Source: Blepharisma stoltei ATCC 30299 (Eukaryota > Protista > Ciliophora). From it: a DNA stretch of 64,000 nucleotides. The position numbers and the translations under genes were made by a program. A model generated the notes under the pieces. It was not told the DNA's origin. It saw only the letters and a list, made by a program, of their open reading frames with translations, and ran no database searches. The stretch lies in the NCBI GenBank assembly GCA_965603825.1, contig CBFDEM010000027.1, forward strand, positions 310,001 through 374,000. Reading direction: 5' to 3'. Shown here one piece after another: positions 32,786 to 40,078 of the stretch (position 1 is its first letter; each line of letters begins with the position of its first letter).

Positions 32786-33592
32786 ATGGACTATAAGAAG
32801 TTTTTAATAAGAGCAAGTAAAAGCGAAAGGGGCTCTTTAAGCCCTGACCAATGTGATGTTAAAGATTTAGATGAAGATATCGTGAATTGTTTAGCGAAAA
32901 TTAAAGAAACGAAGGAAAATATGAAGAAGCTTGTAAAAAGCATTGACAATTTCTCCAAGGTGAAAAGCCCACATTTCACAAAAACTGAAAAATATTTAAC
33001 AGGAAAACAGATGATCTATAAGAAAAAATACGAATTAAATGATTTTCATAGAATCCAAAGAGAAAAATACATTCTTGGCCTTATAAAAGACAACGACCCT
33101 GGCAAGAAAAAATATATTTATACATCAATGCTATATGATTTAGATATAAGAAATGCTTTAAAACAAAACAAGCGAGATTTCGGCTATACTCAAAGAGAAA
33201 ATCCTGTCATTTATAAAACTAGCTCAATAGAAAATTTTCACACAATACCTAAGAATAGCCCGGAACGTTTTAAACATGATTTAAATGATTTGGTGTCCAA
33301 AAATCTAAATAAAATTCTTTATAATTACACTTATTATAATTCCCCAAAGCAACAGAAGAAAATTGAAATGAAAAAAGTTGAAGAAGGTCTACAAAATAAT
33401 AGGCTTGGGCCTATAATGCACTTAAAAGCTGCCAGCATGTGCACAAGTCCAGTGGGAGAAAAAATAATTATAAGGAAAAAGAAAAAAATAAGAAGATTTA
33501 CAGTGAACATCAGAGATGAGGTAATAAAAAACAACGATGAGCTGTCAAACTTGAAAAAGCAATATTCCAAACTTTTGATTATGAAAAATTAG
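32786..33592 (+). CDS. Basic hypothetical protein, 268 aa
   Basis: Intact ATG-TAG ORF. Confidence 0.7.
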   Translation: MDYKKFLIRASKSERGSLSPDQCDVKDLDEDIVNCLAKIKETKENMKKLVKSIDNFSKVKSPHFTKTEKYLTGKQMIYKKKYELNDFHRIQREKYILGLIKDNDPGKKKYIYTSMLYDLDIRNALKQNKRDFGYTQRENPVIYKTSSIENFHTIPKNSPERFKHDLNDLVSKNLNKILYNYTYYNSPKQQKKIEMKKVEEGLQNNRLGPIMHLKAASMCTSPVGEKIIIRKKKKIRRFTVNIRDEVIKNNDELSNLKKQYSKLLIMKN

Positions 33593-34421
33593 ATAAAATA
33601 ATAGAATTTTTATAAATTTGATAACGAATTATTTTTTTGCTTTAGCCTGATTTAATATGTGCTTTTTATAGCTAAAAAATTAATGAAATAATAAGCTGTT
33701 TAATTGATTCTCAATAGCTTTATATTAGATTAGTTAAATTAAGAAGAGAAAAGAATATTTAATCTTAATTATATATATTTTATGAACTGAACTATTTTTA
33801 GACTAAATATTTTAAGAAGCATAGAGTGAAAATTGATGAATGAAAGCTTAATTATAATTCTTAAAATAGCTGACTTGTTGAAAGATGATTGATATAATGC
33901 TAGGCCCATAATGATGCTCTCATGTGGCTCTTTAGCTTTGCTGCAGATCCATATTTAAAGGCAGCTTCTTTAACGACTGAATTACTTTAAGTTAATTCTC
34001 AGCTCGAAGAGCTGGCAAACGAAGCTAACAACAGAACTTTCAAGTCCCATCCTAAGCCAATTAATCCCCAGGCGGAGGTGTATACGGTTCCTTTATATTT
34101 ATAGTTTGAGAATTGTTGCGTTTCGTCCTTAATAGCAACTAGAATAAATTTCTATGTAAAATATATATCATGATAAAGGTGGCGATTTAATTACTAGCAA
34201 AACTTGCTAAAATAAATCAAATAAAATACTATCATAATTTTCTGAAATTTGAGATCTAACAAAAATTTTCTTTTTATCTTGCTATTTCATAAAATAAACT
34301 TCGTAAATTAGCTCTTGTTCTTTTTAGTTCTTCAAATATTCTCTTTTTCTGTTGATTTCTTTCTCAAAAATCTCCATTACATTGACTTATTTCCGAAAAT
34401 GGAATCCCATTTATAAAAATA

Positions 34422-37400
34422 ATGTTACCAGCAAAAGGCAATAGTACTGACGTCTTTTCACGCTCAAGCTTTCAAATCGAAGGTGAAATTCATTACAAAT
34501 ACGCTGAGTTCACCCTCAAAAGCACTTACAAAAACCTTTCTTCTAATGCAATCGAAGGAGAAATCATTATTCCGATCATTTCTGATTTTCAGCTATACAA
34601 CTTCTTGTGCAAGATTGATGGGAAAAGCTGCGACACTAGCCTAGTAGAAAATACTCCTCCACTAAAGACTTATGATAATGCAGCCATTGATCAAAAAAAC
34701 AAATATATCTTGCAGCAATTAGAAAAAAGCGATTTATATTTATTTAATCTTGGACTCATCGAACCAAACTCAGAAATCTCATATGAAATTTCATATGCTT
34801 GCAAAACTGAAGAGCAGCTAGTAGAAAATACTTTTAAATTAAAAATTCCTCATGAATTTTTCCAACACGTTGATGAAGAAGATAAAGAAATCCTTTCAGG
34901 GAGATTTGTTATAAAGAATCCATTGTCAGATCAAACAGAAACTCATGACTTAGAAATCGGCAACTATATTGTTCTAGACAACAAGCATTATGCAGCAGCA
35001 TTACAAAATATTGATAGAAAGCAAGACTTAGAAATTACTTATTATTATGAAACCCCAAAAGTACCTTTTGTAATTGTACAAGAAGATCCTAGGACTAATA
35101 GGCATGCTTTTCATTTGTCATACACCCCTGATAAAAGCTTAACGAATCTTAGTGGATGGGAACAAAAAGGTGAATTTGTGTTGATCCTTGACAGATCAGG
35201 CTCTATGTCTGGCGCAAGAATTAAACTTGCCAGAGAAGCAGCTGCTTTATTCATCCGTTCTCTTCCAGAAGACTCATTTTTTAACATTGTTAGCTTTGGC
35301 TCCTCTTACAACAAAATGTATAATGAAAATAAGAAATATGACTCTTGCACAGTAGAAGAGGCTACTAGAACAGTAATTCAATATGATGCTAATATGGGAG
35401 GAACAAACATCTACGACCCTATCAAATTTGTATTAGAATCTCCAAGAAAGCCAGGATATCCATTGAGTATCTTTTTATTGACTGATGGAGACGTTGAGAG
35501 AAGAGACCAAGTTTTAAATATAATTAAAGACAAAAGAGATGGGGCTAGAATCAGCACAATTGGCATTGGAAATGATTATGAAATTTTAATAAATCAAGCT
35601 GCAAAAGAAGGAAATGGAGTTGCATATAGAATCAAAACTGAAAATGAAATTAAACCAGCTGTTATTGGCTCACTTAAGCAATCTTTAATTCCTGCTCTTA
35701 CCAATATCCAACTTTCAGATTACAGCAAATTTGATTTTGTAAACCCAAGCACTCCTTTCCACATATATGCTGGAAGCTCTATTGATATTGCTGGTATATG
35801 GAAGGCAGGAGTATTCCCTGAGAAAATTTATTTCCAATATTATAGCGAAATTATAGGAGTCAATGAAAATGTTGACATTGAAATAAACCAGGATGAGATT
35901 GTTAGTCACAGTGCAATAATAGCAATTGAAGGGAAAAATTGGACTGGATCTCTTGGTGGCAATAATGAAAGGATGAATCTAAAAGTAATCGATTATCTTG
36001 GAATTCCAGGTCTAGTAAAATACCTGAAAAAGCCTGCTAGTGTATTTGGAACCGGTGGATTATTTGGAAATACAGCTTTTCAGGGTGGGCTATTTGGAAA
36101 CACAGCAAATCAAGGAGGACTATTTGGAAACACAGCAAATCAGGGTGGGCTATTTGGAAATGCACAAAATCAAGGTGGGTTATTTGGAAATACAACCAAT
36201 CAAGGAGGAATGTTTGGAAATACAGCAAATACTGGAGGATTGTTTGGAAATGCAGTAATACCACCTAGAGCTGCTTCAAGAGTTAAAAGGGCAGTAAAAC
36301 CTAAAGTTGCTCGAGCTAAAAAACCTCAGCCTCAAGCAAAACAGCAAGATCCTCAAAGTCCAGCTACAGCACGGACACTCCGAAGCTCAAAGAAAGTACC
36401 TGAAGCAGCCATTCCTACACCAGCAACAAAAAGACGAAGAGTTGCTCAGAAAAAACTAATAAAACAAGCCATGAAAATCGATCAATTTATGATTCCAAAA
36501 AATAAAATACAAAGAATTGTCAGAGATTTTTCTGATGATGTAGTTCCCAATATGAGAATCAAACAAGATGCTTACAAAGCATTCCAAGAAGCTGCGGAGG
36601 CATATTTAATTGAAGTCTTTACAATGTCAAATGATGTTGCTGATGATAATAAAAGAATTACTGTAAGAGATGTAGATATACAAGAAGCAATCAAAAAAAT
36701 TGATAATGAAAAAATGGATATTGAAGAAGAAGAAGAAAAGAAGCCAAAAGGTAGAGGGAAAAAGCAAGCAGTCGTAAAAGAAGAGAGCGAAAGTGAAGAA
36801 GAGCAACCATCACGAAGAACACGATCTGGTAGAAAATTCTCTGAAAAGAAAATTGAACCAAAAAAAGTAAAGAAACAAGCTAAGACACCTTTTAAAGTAG
36901 CTAAAAAAGAAGAAAGTGAAGAAGAAATGCCAACAAGAGTTACAAGGTCGGGGAAAAAAATCTCAGCAAATCAAACTCAAGTGAAGAAGCAAACCAAACC
37001 TAAAAAAGAGATAGATAAGGAAGAATCTCAAAATATCACAGCAAAATCACCTAAAAAGCCTCAAAGAAAAATAGACGTCACTGTATTTCCACAAAAAAGA
37101 GGAAGAGGTAAAAATGACAACCCTGACCCACCAACCAAAAAAATAAAAAATCCTAATGATATTAACACTGCAAGTGAGCAGACAACTCAGCCACAAACAC
37201 CAATAAGCCCGCCAGCATATACACCATGCTCAAATCCGTGCATTGATGTTGGATATGAAGTCGAAAAACTGATGCATTTACAAAAGATTGATGGACATTG
37301 GAGTTCATCATCTGATCTATCTGATATTATCAATAATTTGGTTTGTTCTAAAATTGATATAACAAATATGAATGACAAAAGAACAACTGCATTGGTTGTA

Positions 37401-37517
37401 GCTGTTTTAGATGAAAGATGTCATGACTACATATGCTTGTGGGATTTAGTTGCAGTAAAGGCAAGAAGATGGATGGGGAAGAATAAGCAAAGCGAAATGA
37501 AGCTTGCTGATTTTTAA
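34422..37517 (+). CDS. VIT-vWA (VWA5A/PARP4-type) protein with GLFG repeats and a histone H3-like fold, 1031 aa
   Basis: VIT (Y.N....IE...I.P....L..F...IDG), vWA MIDAS DRSGSM, GGT.I, LLTDG; GGLFGN repeats; H3-like IPK..IQRIVRD..FQEAAEAYL..RITV..DIQ; C-terminal LQ..DG.W...WDLV..KA..W. Confidence 0.88.
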   Translation: MLPAKGNSTDVFSRSSFQIEGEIHYKYAEFTLKSTYKNLSSNAIEGEIIIPIISDFQLYNFLCKIDGKSCDTSLVENTPPLKTYDNAAIDQKNKYILQQLEKSDLYLFNLGLIEPNSEISYEISYACKTEEQLVENTFKLKIPHEFFQHVDEEDKEILSGRFVIKNPLSDQTETHDLEIGNYIVLDNKHYAAALQNIDRKQDLEITYYYETPKVPFVIVQEDPRTNRHAFHLSYTPDKSLTNLSGWEQKGEFVLILDRSGSMSGARIKLAREAAALFIRSLPEDSFFNIVSFGSSYNKMYNENKKYDSCTVEEATRTVIQYDANMGGTNIYDPIKFVLESPRKPGYPLSIFLLTDGDVERRDQVLNIIKDKRDGARISTIGIGNDYEILINQAAKEGNGVAYRIKTENEIKPAVIGSLKQSLIPALTNIQLSDYSKFDFVNPSTPFHIYAGSSIDIAGIWKAGVFPEKIYFQYYSEIIGVNENVDIEINQDEIVSHSAIIAIEGKNWTGSLGGNNERMNLKVIDYLGIPGLVKYLKKPASVFGTGGLFGNTAFQGGLFGNTANQGGLFGNTANQGGLFGNAQNQGGLFGNTTNQGGMFGNTANTGGLFGNAVIPPRAASRVKRAVKPKVARAKKPQPQAKQQDPQSPATARTLRSSKKVPEAAIPTPATKRRRVAQKKLIKQAMKIDQFMIPKNKIQRIVRDFSDDVVPNMRIKQDAYKAFQEAAEAYLIEVFTMSNDVADDNKRITVRDVDIQEAIKKIDNEKMDIEEEEEKKPKGRGKKQAVVKEESESEEEQPSRRTRSGRKFSEKKIEPKKVKKQAKTPFKVAKKEESEEEMPTRVTRSGKKISANQTQVKKQTKPKKEIDKEESQNITAKSPKKPQRKIDVTVFPQKRGRGKNDNPDPPTKKIKNPNDINTASEQTTQPQTPISPPAYTPCSNPCIDVGYEVEKLMHLQKIDGHWSSSSDLSDIINNLVCSKIDITNMNDKRTTALVVAVLDERCHDYICLWDLVAVKARRWMGKNKQSEMKLADF
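36054..36254 (+). repeat. 30-nt coding tandem repeat encoding seven GG(L/M)FGN units (10-aa period)
   Basis: GGLFGNTAFQ GGLFGNTANQ GGLFGNTANQ GGLFGNAQNQ GGLFGNTTNQ GGMFGNTANT GGLFGNA, with synonymous variation between copies. Confidence 0.95.
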
Positions 37518-37642
37518 TATAATAAATAATATCTTATCAATTAAATAATTTGGTGATATATAAATTATGAATCTGAATTATTAAGAATTTTATCAATTTC
37601 ACATTATTTTTAACCAATAAAAAATGTAAATGATTAAGATCG

Positions 37643-40078
37643 TTATAAGTTTTCTTCATCGCTATTTTCTTCTTTACTTTGCAAAAGCTTATCAAGGTTA
37701 ATAGGAACTCCTTTTCCCGGATTTGATTTTCGGCTTATAAAATTAAGTCCTTTTCCAGTCAGCAAGTTATGCTTAGTAAAATCATCAGTAGTTTTTTCTT
37801 TAGTGTTGAACGCACATGCTCTTTCTTTTTCAATTAAAGTTTTTTCTTGTGCCATCATTTCATTCCTCTTCAAATGCACATCATATTCCAGCTTATTTAA
37901 ACTTTCTTCTTTAGCCTTAAGCATTTCATGCTCTTTTTTTAAGTTAATTTGAGCTTCCTTAATTTTTTCTTTTTCTGTATTTATTTCAATTTCTTTTTTC
38001 TTTAATTCTTCTGTTTTTTCTTCAATTTCCCTGTTTTCTATTTCTAAATTAGAGATCATGATGTTTATGCCATTTTCCCTTTGTTGGACTAGGCTTAGCT
38101 TTTCTTGGCATTCCTCTAATACCTCCTTTTTGATAGCTTCCTTCATTTGTCTTCTATCTCGTGAAAGAATAGCTTCAAGGTCAATATTTTTCTTTTTAGA
38201 GTCTTCTAATAGTTGCTTTAATGATATAATTTCCGATTGTAATGCATTTATTTCGGTATCATCTTTTTGGAAAAGCATTTTTTCTTCAAGTTCAGATTTT
38301 TGCTTTTTAATTGTGTCTTGATAAGCAGAAATATAACTATCAGATTCTTTTAGATGATTTATGTAGCTTTCTATTTCGAGCTTTTGTGTCTCGATAATAT
38401 TTTTGAGATCCTTTTCATAATTTTCAAACTCTTCTGTTTTTTCTTGCTCTTTTCTAAAATATTTATTTTCAATTTCTTTTTCTACAGCCTCATAGTAATT
38501 TTTTTTGAAATTTTCAAAATCTGCCTCTTTTTGCTTTAAATCAAGCTTCATATTTTCATATAATTCGCTTTTGCTTTTCAAGACTTCAAGCTTATTTTCA
38601 TAATCTTTTTGCAGAAATTCTTTTTCTATATCAAGATCTTTTGCTTTCTTTTCATAGATCTGAATTTTATTTTCACCATTTTCTTTTAGCTCCTCTGCTT
38701 TTTTCATTTGTTCTGATATTTTCTCTTTCATGAAATTATTTTCTTCCTCTTGCTGCTTTTGATAAATCTCAAACTCTTCTTTTTCTGCTACGAATGATTC
38801 TTTGGATTTTTCTAATAAAAATCTTTGTCGATCTAATTCGATATCCTTTTCGTTGATTTTCTTTTCTTTTTCGCTCAAAGAAAACTCAATAAGCTTTATT
38901 TCACTTAATTTTTTATCAATATCTTTTTGTTTCATCATATACTCAGTGTCATTTTTTTCTTTTATTGAAATTAAATCAAATTCTTTTTGGCTATTTTTTT
39001 TCTCTTTTTTTCTTATAAGCTTTTCTTTTTCTGCTACTTCTCTTTCCTTTTCAGAAATTTTTCTATCAATCTCATCAAATCTTTTTTCCCTTTCATTTAG
39101 TTTTTCTTCTCTATATTCAATCATTTTTTCTCTCTCCATGATTTTTCGTTCTCGCTCTTTTAAATCCTGCTCCTTTTCATAACAATTTTTTTCTCTTTCC
39201 CTGATTTCTTTTTCAGTTTCTTTTTGATTTTCTTTTATTTCTGTTTCCATTTCATTTATTCTCATGTCAAGCTCATTTAATTCACTTTCTTTGATTTTCA
39301 ATTCGGTTTCTTTCATTTTTACTATTTTTTCTCTTTCTTTCAGCTCTTTTTCAGTATCTTCTAATCTTTCTTCTTTTTCTATGGCCTTATTTTTATTTTC
39401 CAGATTTTCTTCAAACATTTTATTCGCTTGATCTTGCCTTTCTTTAATTTTCTTTTCTTTTTCTTTAAGCAATGCATCATATTTTGCTAAAAATTTTTCT
39501 GTTTCTGCTAGTTTGATTTTTGCTCTTTTGATTTCTTCATATTCGATTTCCATGCTGTTTTTCATTTCTTCTAAAATTTCTTTCCCTTTTTTAGCTGATC
39601 ATGACTCTGTGGATGATGAATTCAAACTTAAAGCGATTTTATTTAAATTCTCTTTGGTTTTTTCAATATCATTTTTTTCTATGAGCAGCTTATCGACAGC
39701 CTTTTGTATATATTTGATAGTATTTTCAAATGACTCTTCATCTATATTAAAAGAAAAGCTGCCATCGATTCTTTGAATTTCTCCTTCAACCCTCTTTACT
39801 AGTCTCTCATCAAATGTTCTTGAGCTTTGGTTTATCAATAAATCCTCGAGAATGCTGCAATCTCTTTCAGTTTTTTTGTACATCATATCCAAACTTGCCT
39901 GCTCATATGTAGGAATATTGTTCATGACTAAATGTGGAACTCGCGGCTTTGGAACTGTGCTTGATAGAGTTCTTGGAGTTAGAAAAACTCGAGGCGAATT
40001 TCGTTTAGAATTAAATGCCGAATTTCTTCGGTTTACAAAGTCTGCTGATCCATGTGTTCGAATTGGAGAGTCTGTCAT
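37643..40078 (-). CDS. Long E/K-rich coiled-coil protein, 811 aa (TGA=Trp at 39599)
   Basis: ORFs 39599-40078 and 37643-39565 join in frame via TGA. Confidence 0.8.

What the first reader, a model, noticed from the sequence alone, without database searches (positions are those of the whole stretch)
34422..37517. VIT-vWA protein fused to Nup98-type GLFG repeats and a histone H3-like fold
One uninterrupted ORF has a VWA5A/PARP4-type frame: VIT, vWA with intact DRSGS MIDAS, and the C-terminal LQ..DG.W / W.LV..KA..W domain. Its linker holds (i) seven GG(L/M)FGN repeats (36054-36254), (ii) a basic H3-tail-like stretch (ATARTLRSSKK, PATKRRRVA), and (iii) a segment at 36486-36692, FMIPKNKIQRIVRDFSDDVVPNMRIKQDAYKAFQEAAEAYLIEVFTMSNDVADDNKRITVRDVDIQEA, nearly colinear with H3 [68 protein letters not shown]. 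I know no protein with this architecture. GLFG repeats mark macronuclear Nup98 in Tetrahymena and drive condensates in NUP98 fusions. The protein could therefore be an H4-pairing giant histone variant or histone-chaperone mimic that tethers chromatin to pores or FG condensates (inference).
Basis: partly seen in the sequence, partly recalled or inferred. Interest (0 to 1): 0.92.

Follow-up and report, generated by a model that had tools for sequence, protein, structure and literature searches.

The report
VWA5A-like protein carrying histone H3 fold
A ciliate gene really does encode one protein that joins a VIT-vWA adhesion-type module, seven nuclear-pore-style GLFG repeats and a diverged histone H3 fold; the H3 fusion was already noted in the Blepharisma genome paper and has relatives in Stentor, but nobody knows what it does.

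Summary
Window 34422-37517(+) is one 1,031-codon ORF. Pfam finds VIT, vWA with an intact MIDAS, and Histone (PF00125, E=1e-14); PDB's best matches are H3. It also has seven GG(L/M)FGN repeats and a VWA5A-type C-terminal domain (CTD). It is not a chimera. A transcript-like contig spans vWA to the stop with no difference or splice. A paralogue on contig 23 and relatives elsewhere share the layout.

The architecture is not new. The genome matches Blepharisma stoltei, and that genome paper's SI (PMC9942806) already mentions two "longer histone H3's" with VIT and VWA_3 domains, function unknown. The scan also noted the contig-23 paralogue (s1-646630). I found further members: Stentor SteCoe_3795 and four unnamed proteins.

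New here:
- The GLFG array is conserved in a relative's cDNA.
- The fold is under purifying selection (dN/dS about 0.24).
- Pairing with the genome's own H4 is predicted (0.75; best control 0.00).
- The H3-H3' bundle residues and the αN helix have been lost.
- The H3 module is scattered across the VIT-vWA tree.

Best reading (about 50%): a nuclear VWA5A-like adaptor that holds H4 or chromatin through an H3-derived, non-nucleosomal fold. Function is untested.

The parts
34422..37517 (+). Complete single-exon CDS, 1,031 codons plus a TAA stop
   Evidence: Contig X1 record 7 covers 34941-37523 with 0 differences, 0 gaps and no joints.
34467..34796 (+). VIT domain (residues 16-125)
   Evidence: PF08487, E=7.1e-14. 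The AF2 model shows a β-sandwich with pLDDT about 80-90.
35172..35651 (+). vWA domain (residues 251-410). The MIDAS motif DRSGS is at residues 257-261 (35190-35204), with Thr328 and Asp355.
   Evidence: PF13768 E=3.5e-21 and PF00092 E=6e-12. The MIDAS columns are nearly invariant in family alignment A3. pLDDT is 85-95.
35652..36038 (+). Rest of the conserved VWA5A frame (hybrid-domain strands and helices, residues 411-539)
   Evidence: Aligns with paralogues and P0254 up to about residue 473-490. The AF2 model has strands at 425-487 and helices at 498-525.
36039..36257 (+). FG region (residues 540-612): SVFGT followed by seven GG(L/M)FGN repeats with a 10-residue period
   Evidence: TRF reports 36054-36255, period 30, 6.7 copies. 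PF13634 E=1.8e-5 but below the cut-off. Regex count. Unique in the genome. Conserved as five xLFGN repeats in relative L034. Disordered in the AF2 model.
36258..36470 (+). Basic, H3-tail/αN-derived stretch (residues 613-683) with NLS-like PATKRRRVAQKK
   Evidence: Aligns to the H3 K27-to-αN region through the better-preserved C23 paralogue. That it acts as an NLS is inference.
36471..36713 (+). H3-derived histone fold (residues 684-764): α1, L1, α2, L2, α3
   Evidence: PF00125 E=1e-14 / 4e-16. PDB H3 matches at E about 8e-11. AF2 helices at 693-707, 715-737 and 750-764. dN/dS about 0.24 against L034 and 92% identity to P0117. The predicted H4 interface covers residues 690-761.
36714..37235 (+). 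K/E/S-rich disordered linker (residues 765-938) with further NLS-like KRGRGK / PTKKIK motifs
   Evidence: pLDDT below 50. Least conserved part: 35% identity to L034, dN/dS about 0.47.
37236..37514 (+). VWA5A-type C-terminal domain (CTD, residues 939-1031), four helices
   Evidence: BLASTP to the P0254 CTD gives E=3e-9. The CTD profile hits 72 of 114 VIT-vWA proteins. pLDDT 80-90. dN/dS about 0.06.

Best explanation
The gene encodes an intracellular VWA5A-family protein: a VIT/vWA core with a working MIDAS site, then a long flexible loop, then the family's C-terminal domain (CTD). In an ancestor within heterotrich ciliates, most of a histone H3 was inserted in frame into that loop.

In this copy the H3 part has been reduced to the handshake fold (α1-α2-α3). 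It most likely still pairs with histone H4 and keeps the DNA-contacting arginines and lysines. It has lost the αN helix and the residues that let two H3 molecules form the tetramer. I therefore read it as a non-nucleosomal H3 stand-in. It would hold H4, or an H4-containing dimer on DNA, and so couple the vWA/VIT protein-binding module to histones or chromatin.

The GLFG repeats and several NLS-like basic motifs in the same loop would carry the protein into or through nuclear pores, or give it affinity for transport receptors and FG phases.

Shown here: the architecture, its transcription as one unit, its conservation, purifying selection on the fold, and loss of the tetramer residues. Predicted only: H4 pairing. 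Inferred: nuclear location, the role of the FG repeats, and any regulatory link to CTD-vWA docking.
For: - Architecture and domain significance.
- One continuous transcript-like contig from vWA to the stop, with coverage confined to gene bodies.
- Independent transcriptome relatives: P0117 (MMETSP) and the polyadenylated contig L034, which reads FG repeats + H3 fold + CTD in one frame.
- A paralogue on contig 23 with VIT-vWA-H3-CTD and a nearly intact αN (KKPFRLRPG...REIKKYQ).
- The fold and CTD are the most conserved parts. Identity is 92%/97% to P0117 and 59%/68% to L034, with dN/dS about 0.24 and 0.06. The linker is 35% identical to L034 with dN/dS about 0.47.
- H4 pairing model: median score 0.75 against 0.00 for the best of 3 controls. 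The runs share at least 77% of their contacts and the partner pLDDT is at least 75. The mark was reached by 51 of 78 solved complexes and 2 of 108 mismatched pairs.
- DNA-contact positions R69, R72, R83, K115, R116 and T118 are kept, while H113D, L126E and I130K are changed. The positions are read from the alignment; their structural roles come from my knowledge of nucleosome structure.
- The insert lies in the loop that is disordered in Dictyostelium Vwa1, between VITpt2 and the CTD (PMC10539598). The AF2 model agrees.
Against: - H3-H4 is heavily represented among solved structures, so the complex pass may show likeness rather than retained binding (caveat stated).
- The fold has only moderate confidence as a monomer (pLDDT about 50-59).
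- The genome paper reports the two VIT-VWA H3 proteins as the most weakly expressed H3-domain genes.
- There is no localisation, interaction or phenotype data for any family member.
- Relatives with an almost canonical H3 (Stentor, P0254, P0266, P0350) could be true nucleosomal proteins. That would make the 'non-nucleosomal' reading specific to Blepharisma.
- The FG segment is below Pfam's gathering score.
Confidence: 0.5

Rival explanations
1. It is a genuine nucleosomal H3 variant. The fold enters nucleosomes in place of H3 and displays the VIT-vWA module and CTD on chromatin, comparable to macroH2A carrying a macro domain.
For: - H3-type fold with L1/L2 DNA-contact residues kept.
- Predicted H4 handshake.
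- Relatives in Stentor, P0254, P0266 and P0350 keep C110, H113, D123, L126, I130 and much of the N-terminal tail, as expected if they still assemble like H3.
- The genome paper found no CenH3 in Blepharisma.
Against: - In this copy and its C23 paralogue the four-helix-bundle residues are changed to acidic or polar ones (H113D/N, L126E, I130K/D), and αN is degenerate in the window copy.
- 267 residues follow α3, whereas in canonical H3 the chain ends a few residues after α3 (my knowledge).
- There is no CenH3-style L1 insertion.
- Expression is very weak.
Confidence: 0.17
2. It is an H3 decoy that does not bind H4. The fold and tail remnant would act as a pseudo-substrate or bait for H3-recognising factors (chaperones, importins, modifiers), or simply as a structural or dimerising element of a cytoplasmic VWA5A-like adaptor.
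For: - Strong divergence from H3: 28% identity over the aligned region.
- Low monomer confidence.
- VWA5A-family proteins characterised so far are cytoplasmic adaptors: Dictyostelium Vwa1 with the F-box protein FbxwD (PMC10539598), and the BCSC-1 interactome (PMC12540739).
Against: - Purifying selection on the fold.
- The α2 core EAAEAY and the L2 KRxT motif are retained.
- High-scoring H4 model with zero-scoring controls.
- Several NLS-like motifs (inference).
Confidence: 0.15
3. It is primarily a nuclear-pore or FG-phase component. The GLFG array would anchor the protein in the pore's FG meshwork, and the histone fold would tether chromatin to pores.
For: - Seven regular GLFG repeats, conserved as xLFGN repeats in L034.
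- Blepharisma Nup98-type genes use S/GLFG repeats.
- Fungal VIT-vWA proteins P0086 and P0090 independently carry GLFG/SLFG repeats in the same loop.
Against: - No Nup98 autoproteolytic or GLEBS-type domain.
- PF13634 is below its cut-off.
- The C23 paralogue and all other H3-bearing relatives lack FG repeats, so FG is an add-on and not the core of the family.
- Seven repeats make a short FG domain (my knowledge).
Confidence: 0.08
4. It is an assembly or annotation artefact that joins a VIT-vWA gene to a histone gene.
For: None found. The idea rests only on how unusual the architecture is.
Against: - Uninterrupted ORF.
- A single contig in each of several runs spans the junctions without differences.
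- The same order of modules appears in a paralogue, in a polyadenylated cDNA contig of a relative, in Stentor, and in 27-kb contigs of other organisms.
- The family CTD follows the histone fold in the same frame.
Confidence: 0.01

Closest known systems
The two 'longer histone H3's' of Blepharisma stoltei (Singh et al. 2023, PNAS, SI Appendix; PMC9942806)
   Same: This is almost certainly one of those two genes. The genome matches: 41 Mb, 64 contigs, UGA read as Trp. The SI describes H3-domain proteins with VIT (PF08487) and VWA_3 (PF13768), role unknown, and weakest expression among H3-domain genes.
   Different: The SI calls the VIT/vWA part 'N-terminal domains' of a histone. It does not mention the GLFG repeats, the VWA5A-type CTD after the fold, relatives outside Blepharisma, or the loss of the tetramerisation residues.
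Contig-23 paralogue (L025, minus strand, about 867 aa; earlier scan note s1-646630)
   Same: VIT-vWA-H3 fold-basic linker-CTD. It is 40-42% identical in the frame and 36-42% in the fold. It shares the derived IPK.K and QEA motifs and the L126E change.
   Different: It has no FG repeats. Its αN is almost intact (KKPFRLRPG...REIKKYQNSTDLL), and it is 39% identical to canonical H3 against 28% for the window copy.
Stentor coeruleus SteCoe_3795 (OMJ93221.1 / A0A1R2CW74) and unnamed P0254, P0266, P0350
   Same: Same order of modules: VIT, vWA, H3, basic linker, CTD.
   Different: Their H3 modules are near-canonical, with the tail from about K4-K9 onward. C110, H113, D123, L126 and I130 are kept, and there are no GLFG repeats. 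They sit in different branches of the VIT-vWA tree.
Human VWA5A/BCSC-1 and Dictyostelium Vwa1 (intracellular VIT-vWFA-CTD proteins; PMC10539598, PMC12540739)
   Same: VIT, hybrid/vWA with MIDAS, a disordered loop, and a roughly 100-residue CTD. The CTD profile matches mollusc and sponge VWA5A-like proteins at E of 1e-10 to 1e-18.
   Different: Those proteins have no histone fold or FG repeats in the loop. Their known partners are cytoplasmic (the F-box protein FbxwD; STATs, CDC42). Their function is also poorly understood.
Nup98/Nup100/Nup116-type GLFG nucleoporins, including ciliate Nup98 paralogues
   Same: GLFG core with N/Q/T-rich spacers. Blepharisma Nup98-type genes use SLFG/GLFG.
   Different: It has no autoproteolytic domain (PF04096) and no GLEBS motif. 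It has only seven very regular repeats. PF13634 is below its cut-off.
Histone-fold fusion proteins such as macroH2A and CENP-T (from my own knowledge)
   Same: A histone fold joined to large non-histone parts that bring another activity to chromatin.
   Different: Here the fold is internal, H3-derived, and embedded in a VWA5A frame. No such combination has been functionally described.

Membership tests
VWA5A-type intracellular VIT-vWA-CTD proteins | N-terminal VIT domain | tested here: met
   PF08487, E=7.1e-14, residues 16-125
VWA5A-type intracellular VIT-vWA-CTD proteins | vWA domain with a complete MIDAS (DxSxS, Thr, Asp) | tested here: met
   PF13768, E=3.5e-21. D257, S259, S261, T328 and D355 sit in nearly invariant columns of A3.
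VWA5A-type intracellular VIT-vWA-CTD proteins | Conserved C-terminal domain of about 100 residues after a disordered loop | tested here: met
   The CTD HMM hits 72 of 114 relatives, including animal VWA5A-like proteins. BLASTP to the P0254 CTD gives E=3e-9. The AF2 model shows four helices with pLDDT 80-90.
VWA5A-type intracellular VIT-vWA-CTD proteins | No signal peptide (intracellular) | tested here: inconclusive
   The N-terminus MLPAKGNSTDVFSRSS has no hydrophobic stretch on inspection. No predictor was run.
Core histone H3 (nucleosomal) | Histone fold α1-L1-α2-L2-α3, closest to H3 | tested here: met
   PF00125 E=1e-14 / 4e-16. All the best PDB matches are H3. Helices at 693-707, 715-737 and 750-764.
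Core histone H3 (nucleosomal) | N-terminal tail (K4/K9/K27/K36 motifs) and αN helix | tested here: not met
   The tail and αN are unrecognisable in the window copy. They are traceable only through the C23 paralogue.
Core histone H3 (nucleosomal) | H3-H3' four-helix-bundle residues (C110, H113, D123, L126, I130) | tested here: not met
   C110V, H113D, L126E and I130K; only D123 is kept (alignment). The residue roles are from my knowledge of nucleosome structure.
Core histone H3 (nucleosomal) | Heterodimer with H4 | tested here: inconclusive
   The model supports binding (0.75 against 0.00 for the best of 3 controls). The mark was reached by 51 of 78 solved complexes and 2 of 108 mismatched pairs. 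The pass may come from memory of H3-H4 structures.
Core histone H3 (nucleosomal) | Chain ends shortly after α3 | tested here: not met
   267 residues follow α3.
CenH3 / CENP-A | Lengthened loop 1 and CATD-type divergence with retained tetramerisation | tested here: not met
   L1 has the same length as in H3, and the bundle residues are lost.
Nup98-type GLFG nucleoporin | GLFG repeat domain | tested here: inconclusive
   Seven GG(L/M)FGN repeats, but PF13634 scores 25.9 bits against a 32.2 cut-off.
Nup98-type GLFG nucleoporin | C-terminal autoproteolytic domain (PF04096) | tested here: not met
   No hit in this protein. Five other loci in the genome carry it.

The most novel reading that the evidence does not exclude
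Repeated in-frame pairing of histone H3 with VIT-vWA-CTD proteins across ciliates is a 'Rosetta stone' for the whole family. The pairing takes at least two different layouts and sits on scattered tree positions. On this reading, VWA5A/PARP4-type VIT-vWA modules are histone H3-H4 or chromatin-handling modules. Members with a canonical H3 (Stentor, P0254, P0266, P0350) would be built into nucleosomes and decorate chromatin with MIDAS domains. The Blepharisma GLFG-bearing copy would have specialised into an H4-escorting or pore-associated H3 mimic, possibly tied to nuclear dimorphism.
Probability: 0.2. Interest if true: 0.85.

Novelty: new variant of a known kind. Interest (0 to 1): 0.58.

Why it matters
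VWA5A/BCSC-1, PARP4 and their protist relatives are widespread, but their VIT-vWA-CTD unit has no agreed molecular function. A lineage in which this unit is repeatedly hard-wired to histone H3 gives a concrete and testable lead: histone or chromatin handling. For chromatin biology, it is a natural series running from near-canonical H3 inside a large protein (Stentor and others) to a stripped-down fold predicted to bind H4, with tetramerisation residues removed and GLFG repeats added (this gene). That series bears on how histone folds are re-used outside nucleosomes. For the scan, the main lesson is that the striking architecture is real but had already been noted, without follow-up, in the genome paper's supplement.

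Tried and rejected
- Assembly chimera or hidden introns: rejected. The transcript-like contig is continuous, read laying shows no joints, and a paralogue and orthologues share the layout.
- Uniqueness of the architecture: rejected. Two word-indexed searches with the window protein found no other VIT+vWA+histone protein. The exhaustive profile search and a search seeded with P0254 did. The first blanks were a sensitivity limit.
- Most long 'H3' hits (P0116, P0118, P0125 and others) are concatenated histone-cluster gene models and are not relevant.
- CenH3 reading: there is no L1 insertion and the bundle residues are lost.
- True Nup98 paralogue: no autoproteolytic domain.
- Neighbouring ORFs 32786-33592(+) and 37643-39565(-): no Pfam family, so no context clue.
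- The identity of the 'VWA domain-containing protein' that co-purified with Tetrahymena H2A (PMC6502085) could not be resolved, because no supplement is held. It stays a lead only.
- Single origin of the H3 insert: not supported by the VIT-vWA tree, where starred branches force at least 6 changes. I did not run an AU test or a tree of the H3 module, so recurrent capture, repeated loss and gene conversion remain open.
- Technical slips: a frame error, a term that was too short, a script bug, a pattern the tool does not accept, a pattern flooded by a 9-nt microsatellite because I mis-set the spacing (corrected), and one unanswered collection call.
- The FG-segment protein search of the genome found only the gene itself.
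Full report
**1. What is there**

Window 34422-37517(+) translates without interruption into 1,031 residues and ends at TAA. Only 12 more sense codons lie upstream in frame.

Pfam on the whole chain gives three significant domain types:
- VIT, residues 16-125, E=7e-14.
- VWA_3 / VWA / VWA_2, residues 251-410, E=3.5e-21.
- Histone PF00125, residues 648-758, E=1e-14 (55 bits; cut-off 26.4).

The excised histone segment scores E=4e-16, and its best solved relatives are all histone H3 (E about 8e-11). The MIDAS motif DRSGS (257-261) with Thr328 and Asp355 is intact and sits in nearly invariant family columns.

Residues 545-611 are seven GG(L/M)FGN units. At the DNA level this is 36054-36255, period 30, 6.7 copies. 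The FG segment is below Pfam's gathering score for PF13634 (25.9 against 32.2 bits). An array with this period occurs nowhere else in the genome.

The last roughly 93 residues are the C-terminal domain (CTD) of the VWA5A family. A profile built from this family's C-termini hits the C-termini of 72 of 114 VIT-vWA proteins, including mollusc and sponge 'VWA5A-like' proteins. BLASTP to the CTD of P0254 gives E=3e-9.

An AlphaFold2 model (mean pLDDT 64) shows the following:
- a confident VIT/vWA core (residues about 10-510);
- a disordered stretch at 512-690;
- helices at 693-707, 715-737 and 750-764, the histone-fold pattern, at moderate confidence;
- a disordered stretch at 764-935;
- a confident four-helix CTD.

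So the FG repeats, the H3 remnant and a K/E/S-rich stretch all lie in the loop that is disordered in Dictyostelium Vwa1, between the core and the CTD (PMC10539598).

**2. Organism and gene integrity**

The genome has 41.46 Mb in 64 contigs, and paralogues carry in-frame TGA at conserved Trp positions. This matches the published Blepharisma stoltei ATCC 30299 macronuclear assembly: 41 Mbp, 64 telomere-to-telomere sequences, UGA read as Trp, 15-16 bp introns (PMC9942806). The identification is an inference from these matches. The window is contig 27, 310001-374000.

Four runs from one study hold the stretch. Their kind is only guessed to be RNA. However, coverage is confined to gene bodies, is zero over the intergenic 33685-34275, and the contigs start and stop at the ORF ends. 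One contig (X1 record 7) covers 34941-37523 with no difference, gap or joint. It therefore crosses the vWA/FG, FG/histone and histone/CTD junctions. No intron is removed.

Minor contigs with 4-6 differences per roughly 130 bases are probably a second allele or strain. A short cross-match at 36720-36742 falls in the GAA repeat.

**3. Relatives**

Two word-indexed searches with the window protein found many VIT-vWA proteins but no other with a histone domain. That blank was a sensitivity limit. Other searches found the following.

- **Contig-23 paralogue.** The genome has a second gene on contig 23 (L025, minus strand, about 867 residues) with VIT-vWA-H3-CTD. Its H3 part keeps αN almost intact and is 39% identical to the genome's canonical H3, against 28% for the window copy. 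It has no FG repeats. Its tandem neighbour is an H3-less paralogue with a degenerate MIDAS.
- **Further family members.** An exhaustive profile search with the two fusion folds, followed by Pfam scans and a search seeded with P0254, found:
  - P0254 (850 aa, on a 27-kb gene-dense contig with 49% GC and the standard code);
  - P0266 (925 aa, named 'histone H3' by JGI);
  - P0350 (843 aa);
  - Stentor coeruleus SteCoe_3795 (930 aa, OMJ93221.1);
  - P0349 (873 aa, H3 at the extreme C-terminus, no CTD).
- **Close relatives of the window gene.** P0117 is an MMETSP transcript, 92% identical in the fold. L034 is a polyadenylated contig that also uses TGA for Trp. In one frame it reads the end of the vWA frame, five xLFGN repeats, a basic tail with GGVKKP, the fold, a basic linker and the CTD.

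**4. Prior art**

[quoted passage not shown] It adds that the role of this pair is unknown, that these are the most weakly expressed H3-domain proteins, and that no CenH3 was recognised.

Full-text searches found no functional study of such fusions. The scan itself had already noted the contig-23 paralogue (s1-646630).

So the VIT-vWA-H3 combination is not new. Not previously described, as far as I could find:
- the GLFG array;
- the CTD after the fold;
- the wider family;
- the state of the fold.

**5. State of the H3 module**

In the family alignment Stentor, P0350, P0254 and P0266 keep C110, H113, D123, L126 and I130 and long parts of the H3 tail. The Blepharisma copies, including P0117, share derived changes: IPK.K in place of VRKLPF, QEA in place of QLA, and L126E. 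They also have H113D/N and I130K/D. By my knowledge of nucleosome structure, these positions make the H3-H3' four-helix bundle.

The window copy keeps R69, R72, R83, K115, R116 and T118 (DNA-contact positions) and the α2 core EAAEAY. Its αN is unrecognisable.

The fold is under purifying selection. It is 92% identical to P0117 and 59% to L034, against 83% and 35% for the following linker. A rough Nei-Gojobori dN/dS against L034 gives about 0.24 for the fold, 0.06 for the CTD, 0.47 for the linker and 0.50 for the FG region. dS is near saturation, so these ratios are rough.

A complex model of residues 660-770 with the genome's own H4 (residues 20-105) passes the tool's mark:
- median score 0.75, against 0.00 for the best of 3 controls;
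- the runs agree in at least 77% of their contacts, and the partner pLDDT is at least 75;
- the mark was reached by 51 of 78 solved complexes and 2 of 108 mismatched pairs.

Because H3-H4 is abundantly solved, this pass shows likeness and may not show retained binding.

**6. Evolution**

In a maximum-likelihood tree of the VIT-vWA frame (30 rows), the ciliate-type proteins form one group, but the seven H3-bearing rows are scattered. Well-supported branches force at least 6 gains or losses.

Within Blepharisma the topology is (C44,(C27,(C23, C23-neighbour, C2a))). Together with the shared derived residues of the C27 and C23 folds, this implies an H3-bearing ancestor and later losses.

Elsewhere the H3 modules carry tail features typical of different H3 types: a heterotrich-like TPAGKTPKKHLA in P0350 and a generic PRKQLA.KAARKSAPATGG in P0349. 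P0349 also has a different layout. This suggests repeated capture or gene conversion. I did not test this further.

The loop is a general insertion site in the family. Fungal members P0086 and P0090 carry GLFG/SLFG repeats there. Mussel and other members carry ubiquitin or synaptobrevin domains.

**7. Interpretation**

The best-supported reading (about 0.5) is a nuclear VWA5A-like adaptor. Its H3-derived fold would hold H4, or an H4-containing dimer on DNA, without forming nucleosomal tetramers. That would couple the MIDAS/VIT protein-binding core to histones or chromatin. The GLFG repeats and NLS-like motifs would serve nuclear transport or FG-phase affinity.

Rivals:
- a true nucleosomal H3 variant (0.17);
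- an H3 decoy that does not bind H4 (0.15);
- a pore or FG-phase component that tethers chromatin (0.08);
- an artefact (0.01).

A Tetrahymena AP-MS study lists an unnamed 'VWA domain-containing protein' among H2A co-purifying proteins (PMC6502085). I could not establish which protein it is, so it is only a lead.

- Read laying was given 5,901 letters.
- Paralogues containing TGA (Trp in this organism) were given to the reference-based tools only as pieces without the TGA (for example L025:2260-4446:-). They were translated with the organism's own code inside scripts.

Noticed in passing
L025 (G000:C23:539500-548500), minus strand: There is a tandem pair of VIT-vWA-CTD genes. One carries the H3 fold (about 867 aa). 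Its neighbour (about 772 aa) has no histone fold and a degenerate MIDAS (DRNAS instead of DRSGS). In-frame TGA codons fall on conserved Trp positions.
   Followed up: partly
P0266 (JGI protein, 925 aa), H3-tail region: Inside its H3 tail, between a PRKHLSTKAAR stretch and GGVKKPHRF, sits GKSLGKVGAMKSVHR. This matches the Blepharisma H4 N-tail GKGLGKVGAKKRHRR at about 11 of 15 positions, so it looks like an H4-tail piece within an H3 tail.
   Followed up: no
P0086 (Byssothecium circinans) and P0090 (Fusarium sarcochroum): These fungal VIT-vWA-CTD proteins carry many GLFG/SLFG repeats (PF13634) in the same loop between the core and the CTD. FG insertion into this family's loop has therefore happened independently of the ciliate case.
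   Followed up: partly
P0349 and cluster members P0383-P0386: This is a VIT-vWA protein whose H3 module is at the extreme C-terminus with no CTD. It groups with a Tetrahymena VIT-vWA protein in the tree, so it is probably an independent H3 fusion with a different layout.
   Followed up: partly
L033 (Logan contig carrying P0254): The H3-bearing gene lies two genes from another VIT-vWA gene. It is directly followed by an IBR (RBR-type E3 ligase) gene, with a second IBR gene two genes further on. This is interesting because Dictyostelium Vwa1 partners with an E3 ligase subunit, but it may be chance.
   Followed up: no
G000:C3:486529-486782 and G000:C36:154229-154311: Long perfect 9-nt microsatellites (GGTCTTTTT)n, which would read GLF GLF... 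if translated.
   Followed up: no
L004, L005, L007-L009 and L028-L032 (several contigs): Canonical H3 and H4 genes sit in divergent head-to-head pairs about 200 bp apart. Two H4 loci (C52, C15) encode a longer N-terminal tail. L012 (C26) encodes an H3 variant with a divergent αN region.
   Followed up: partly
G000:C27:305244-305627, about 4.4 kb before the window start: A Nup98-type autoproteolytic domain (PF04096, 98 bits) lies close upstream of the window, on the same contig as this GLFG-bearing gene. Four further strong PF04096 loci (plus one weaker match) exist elsewhere in the genome.
   Followed up: partly
window 34844-34970, 35726-35784, 37865-37924: Minor contigs in the runs differ from the window at 4-6 positions per roughly 130 bases. 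They are probably a second allele or the other mating-type strain in the sample.
   Followed up: no
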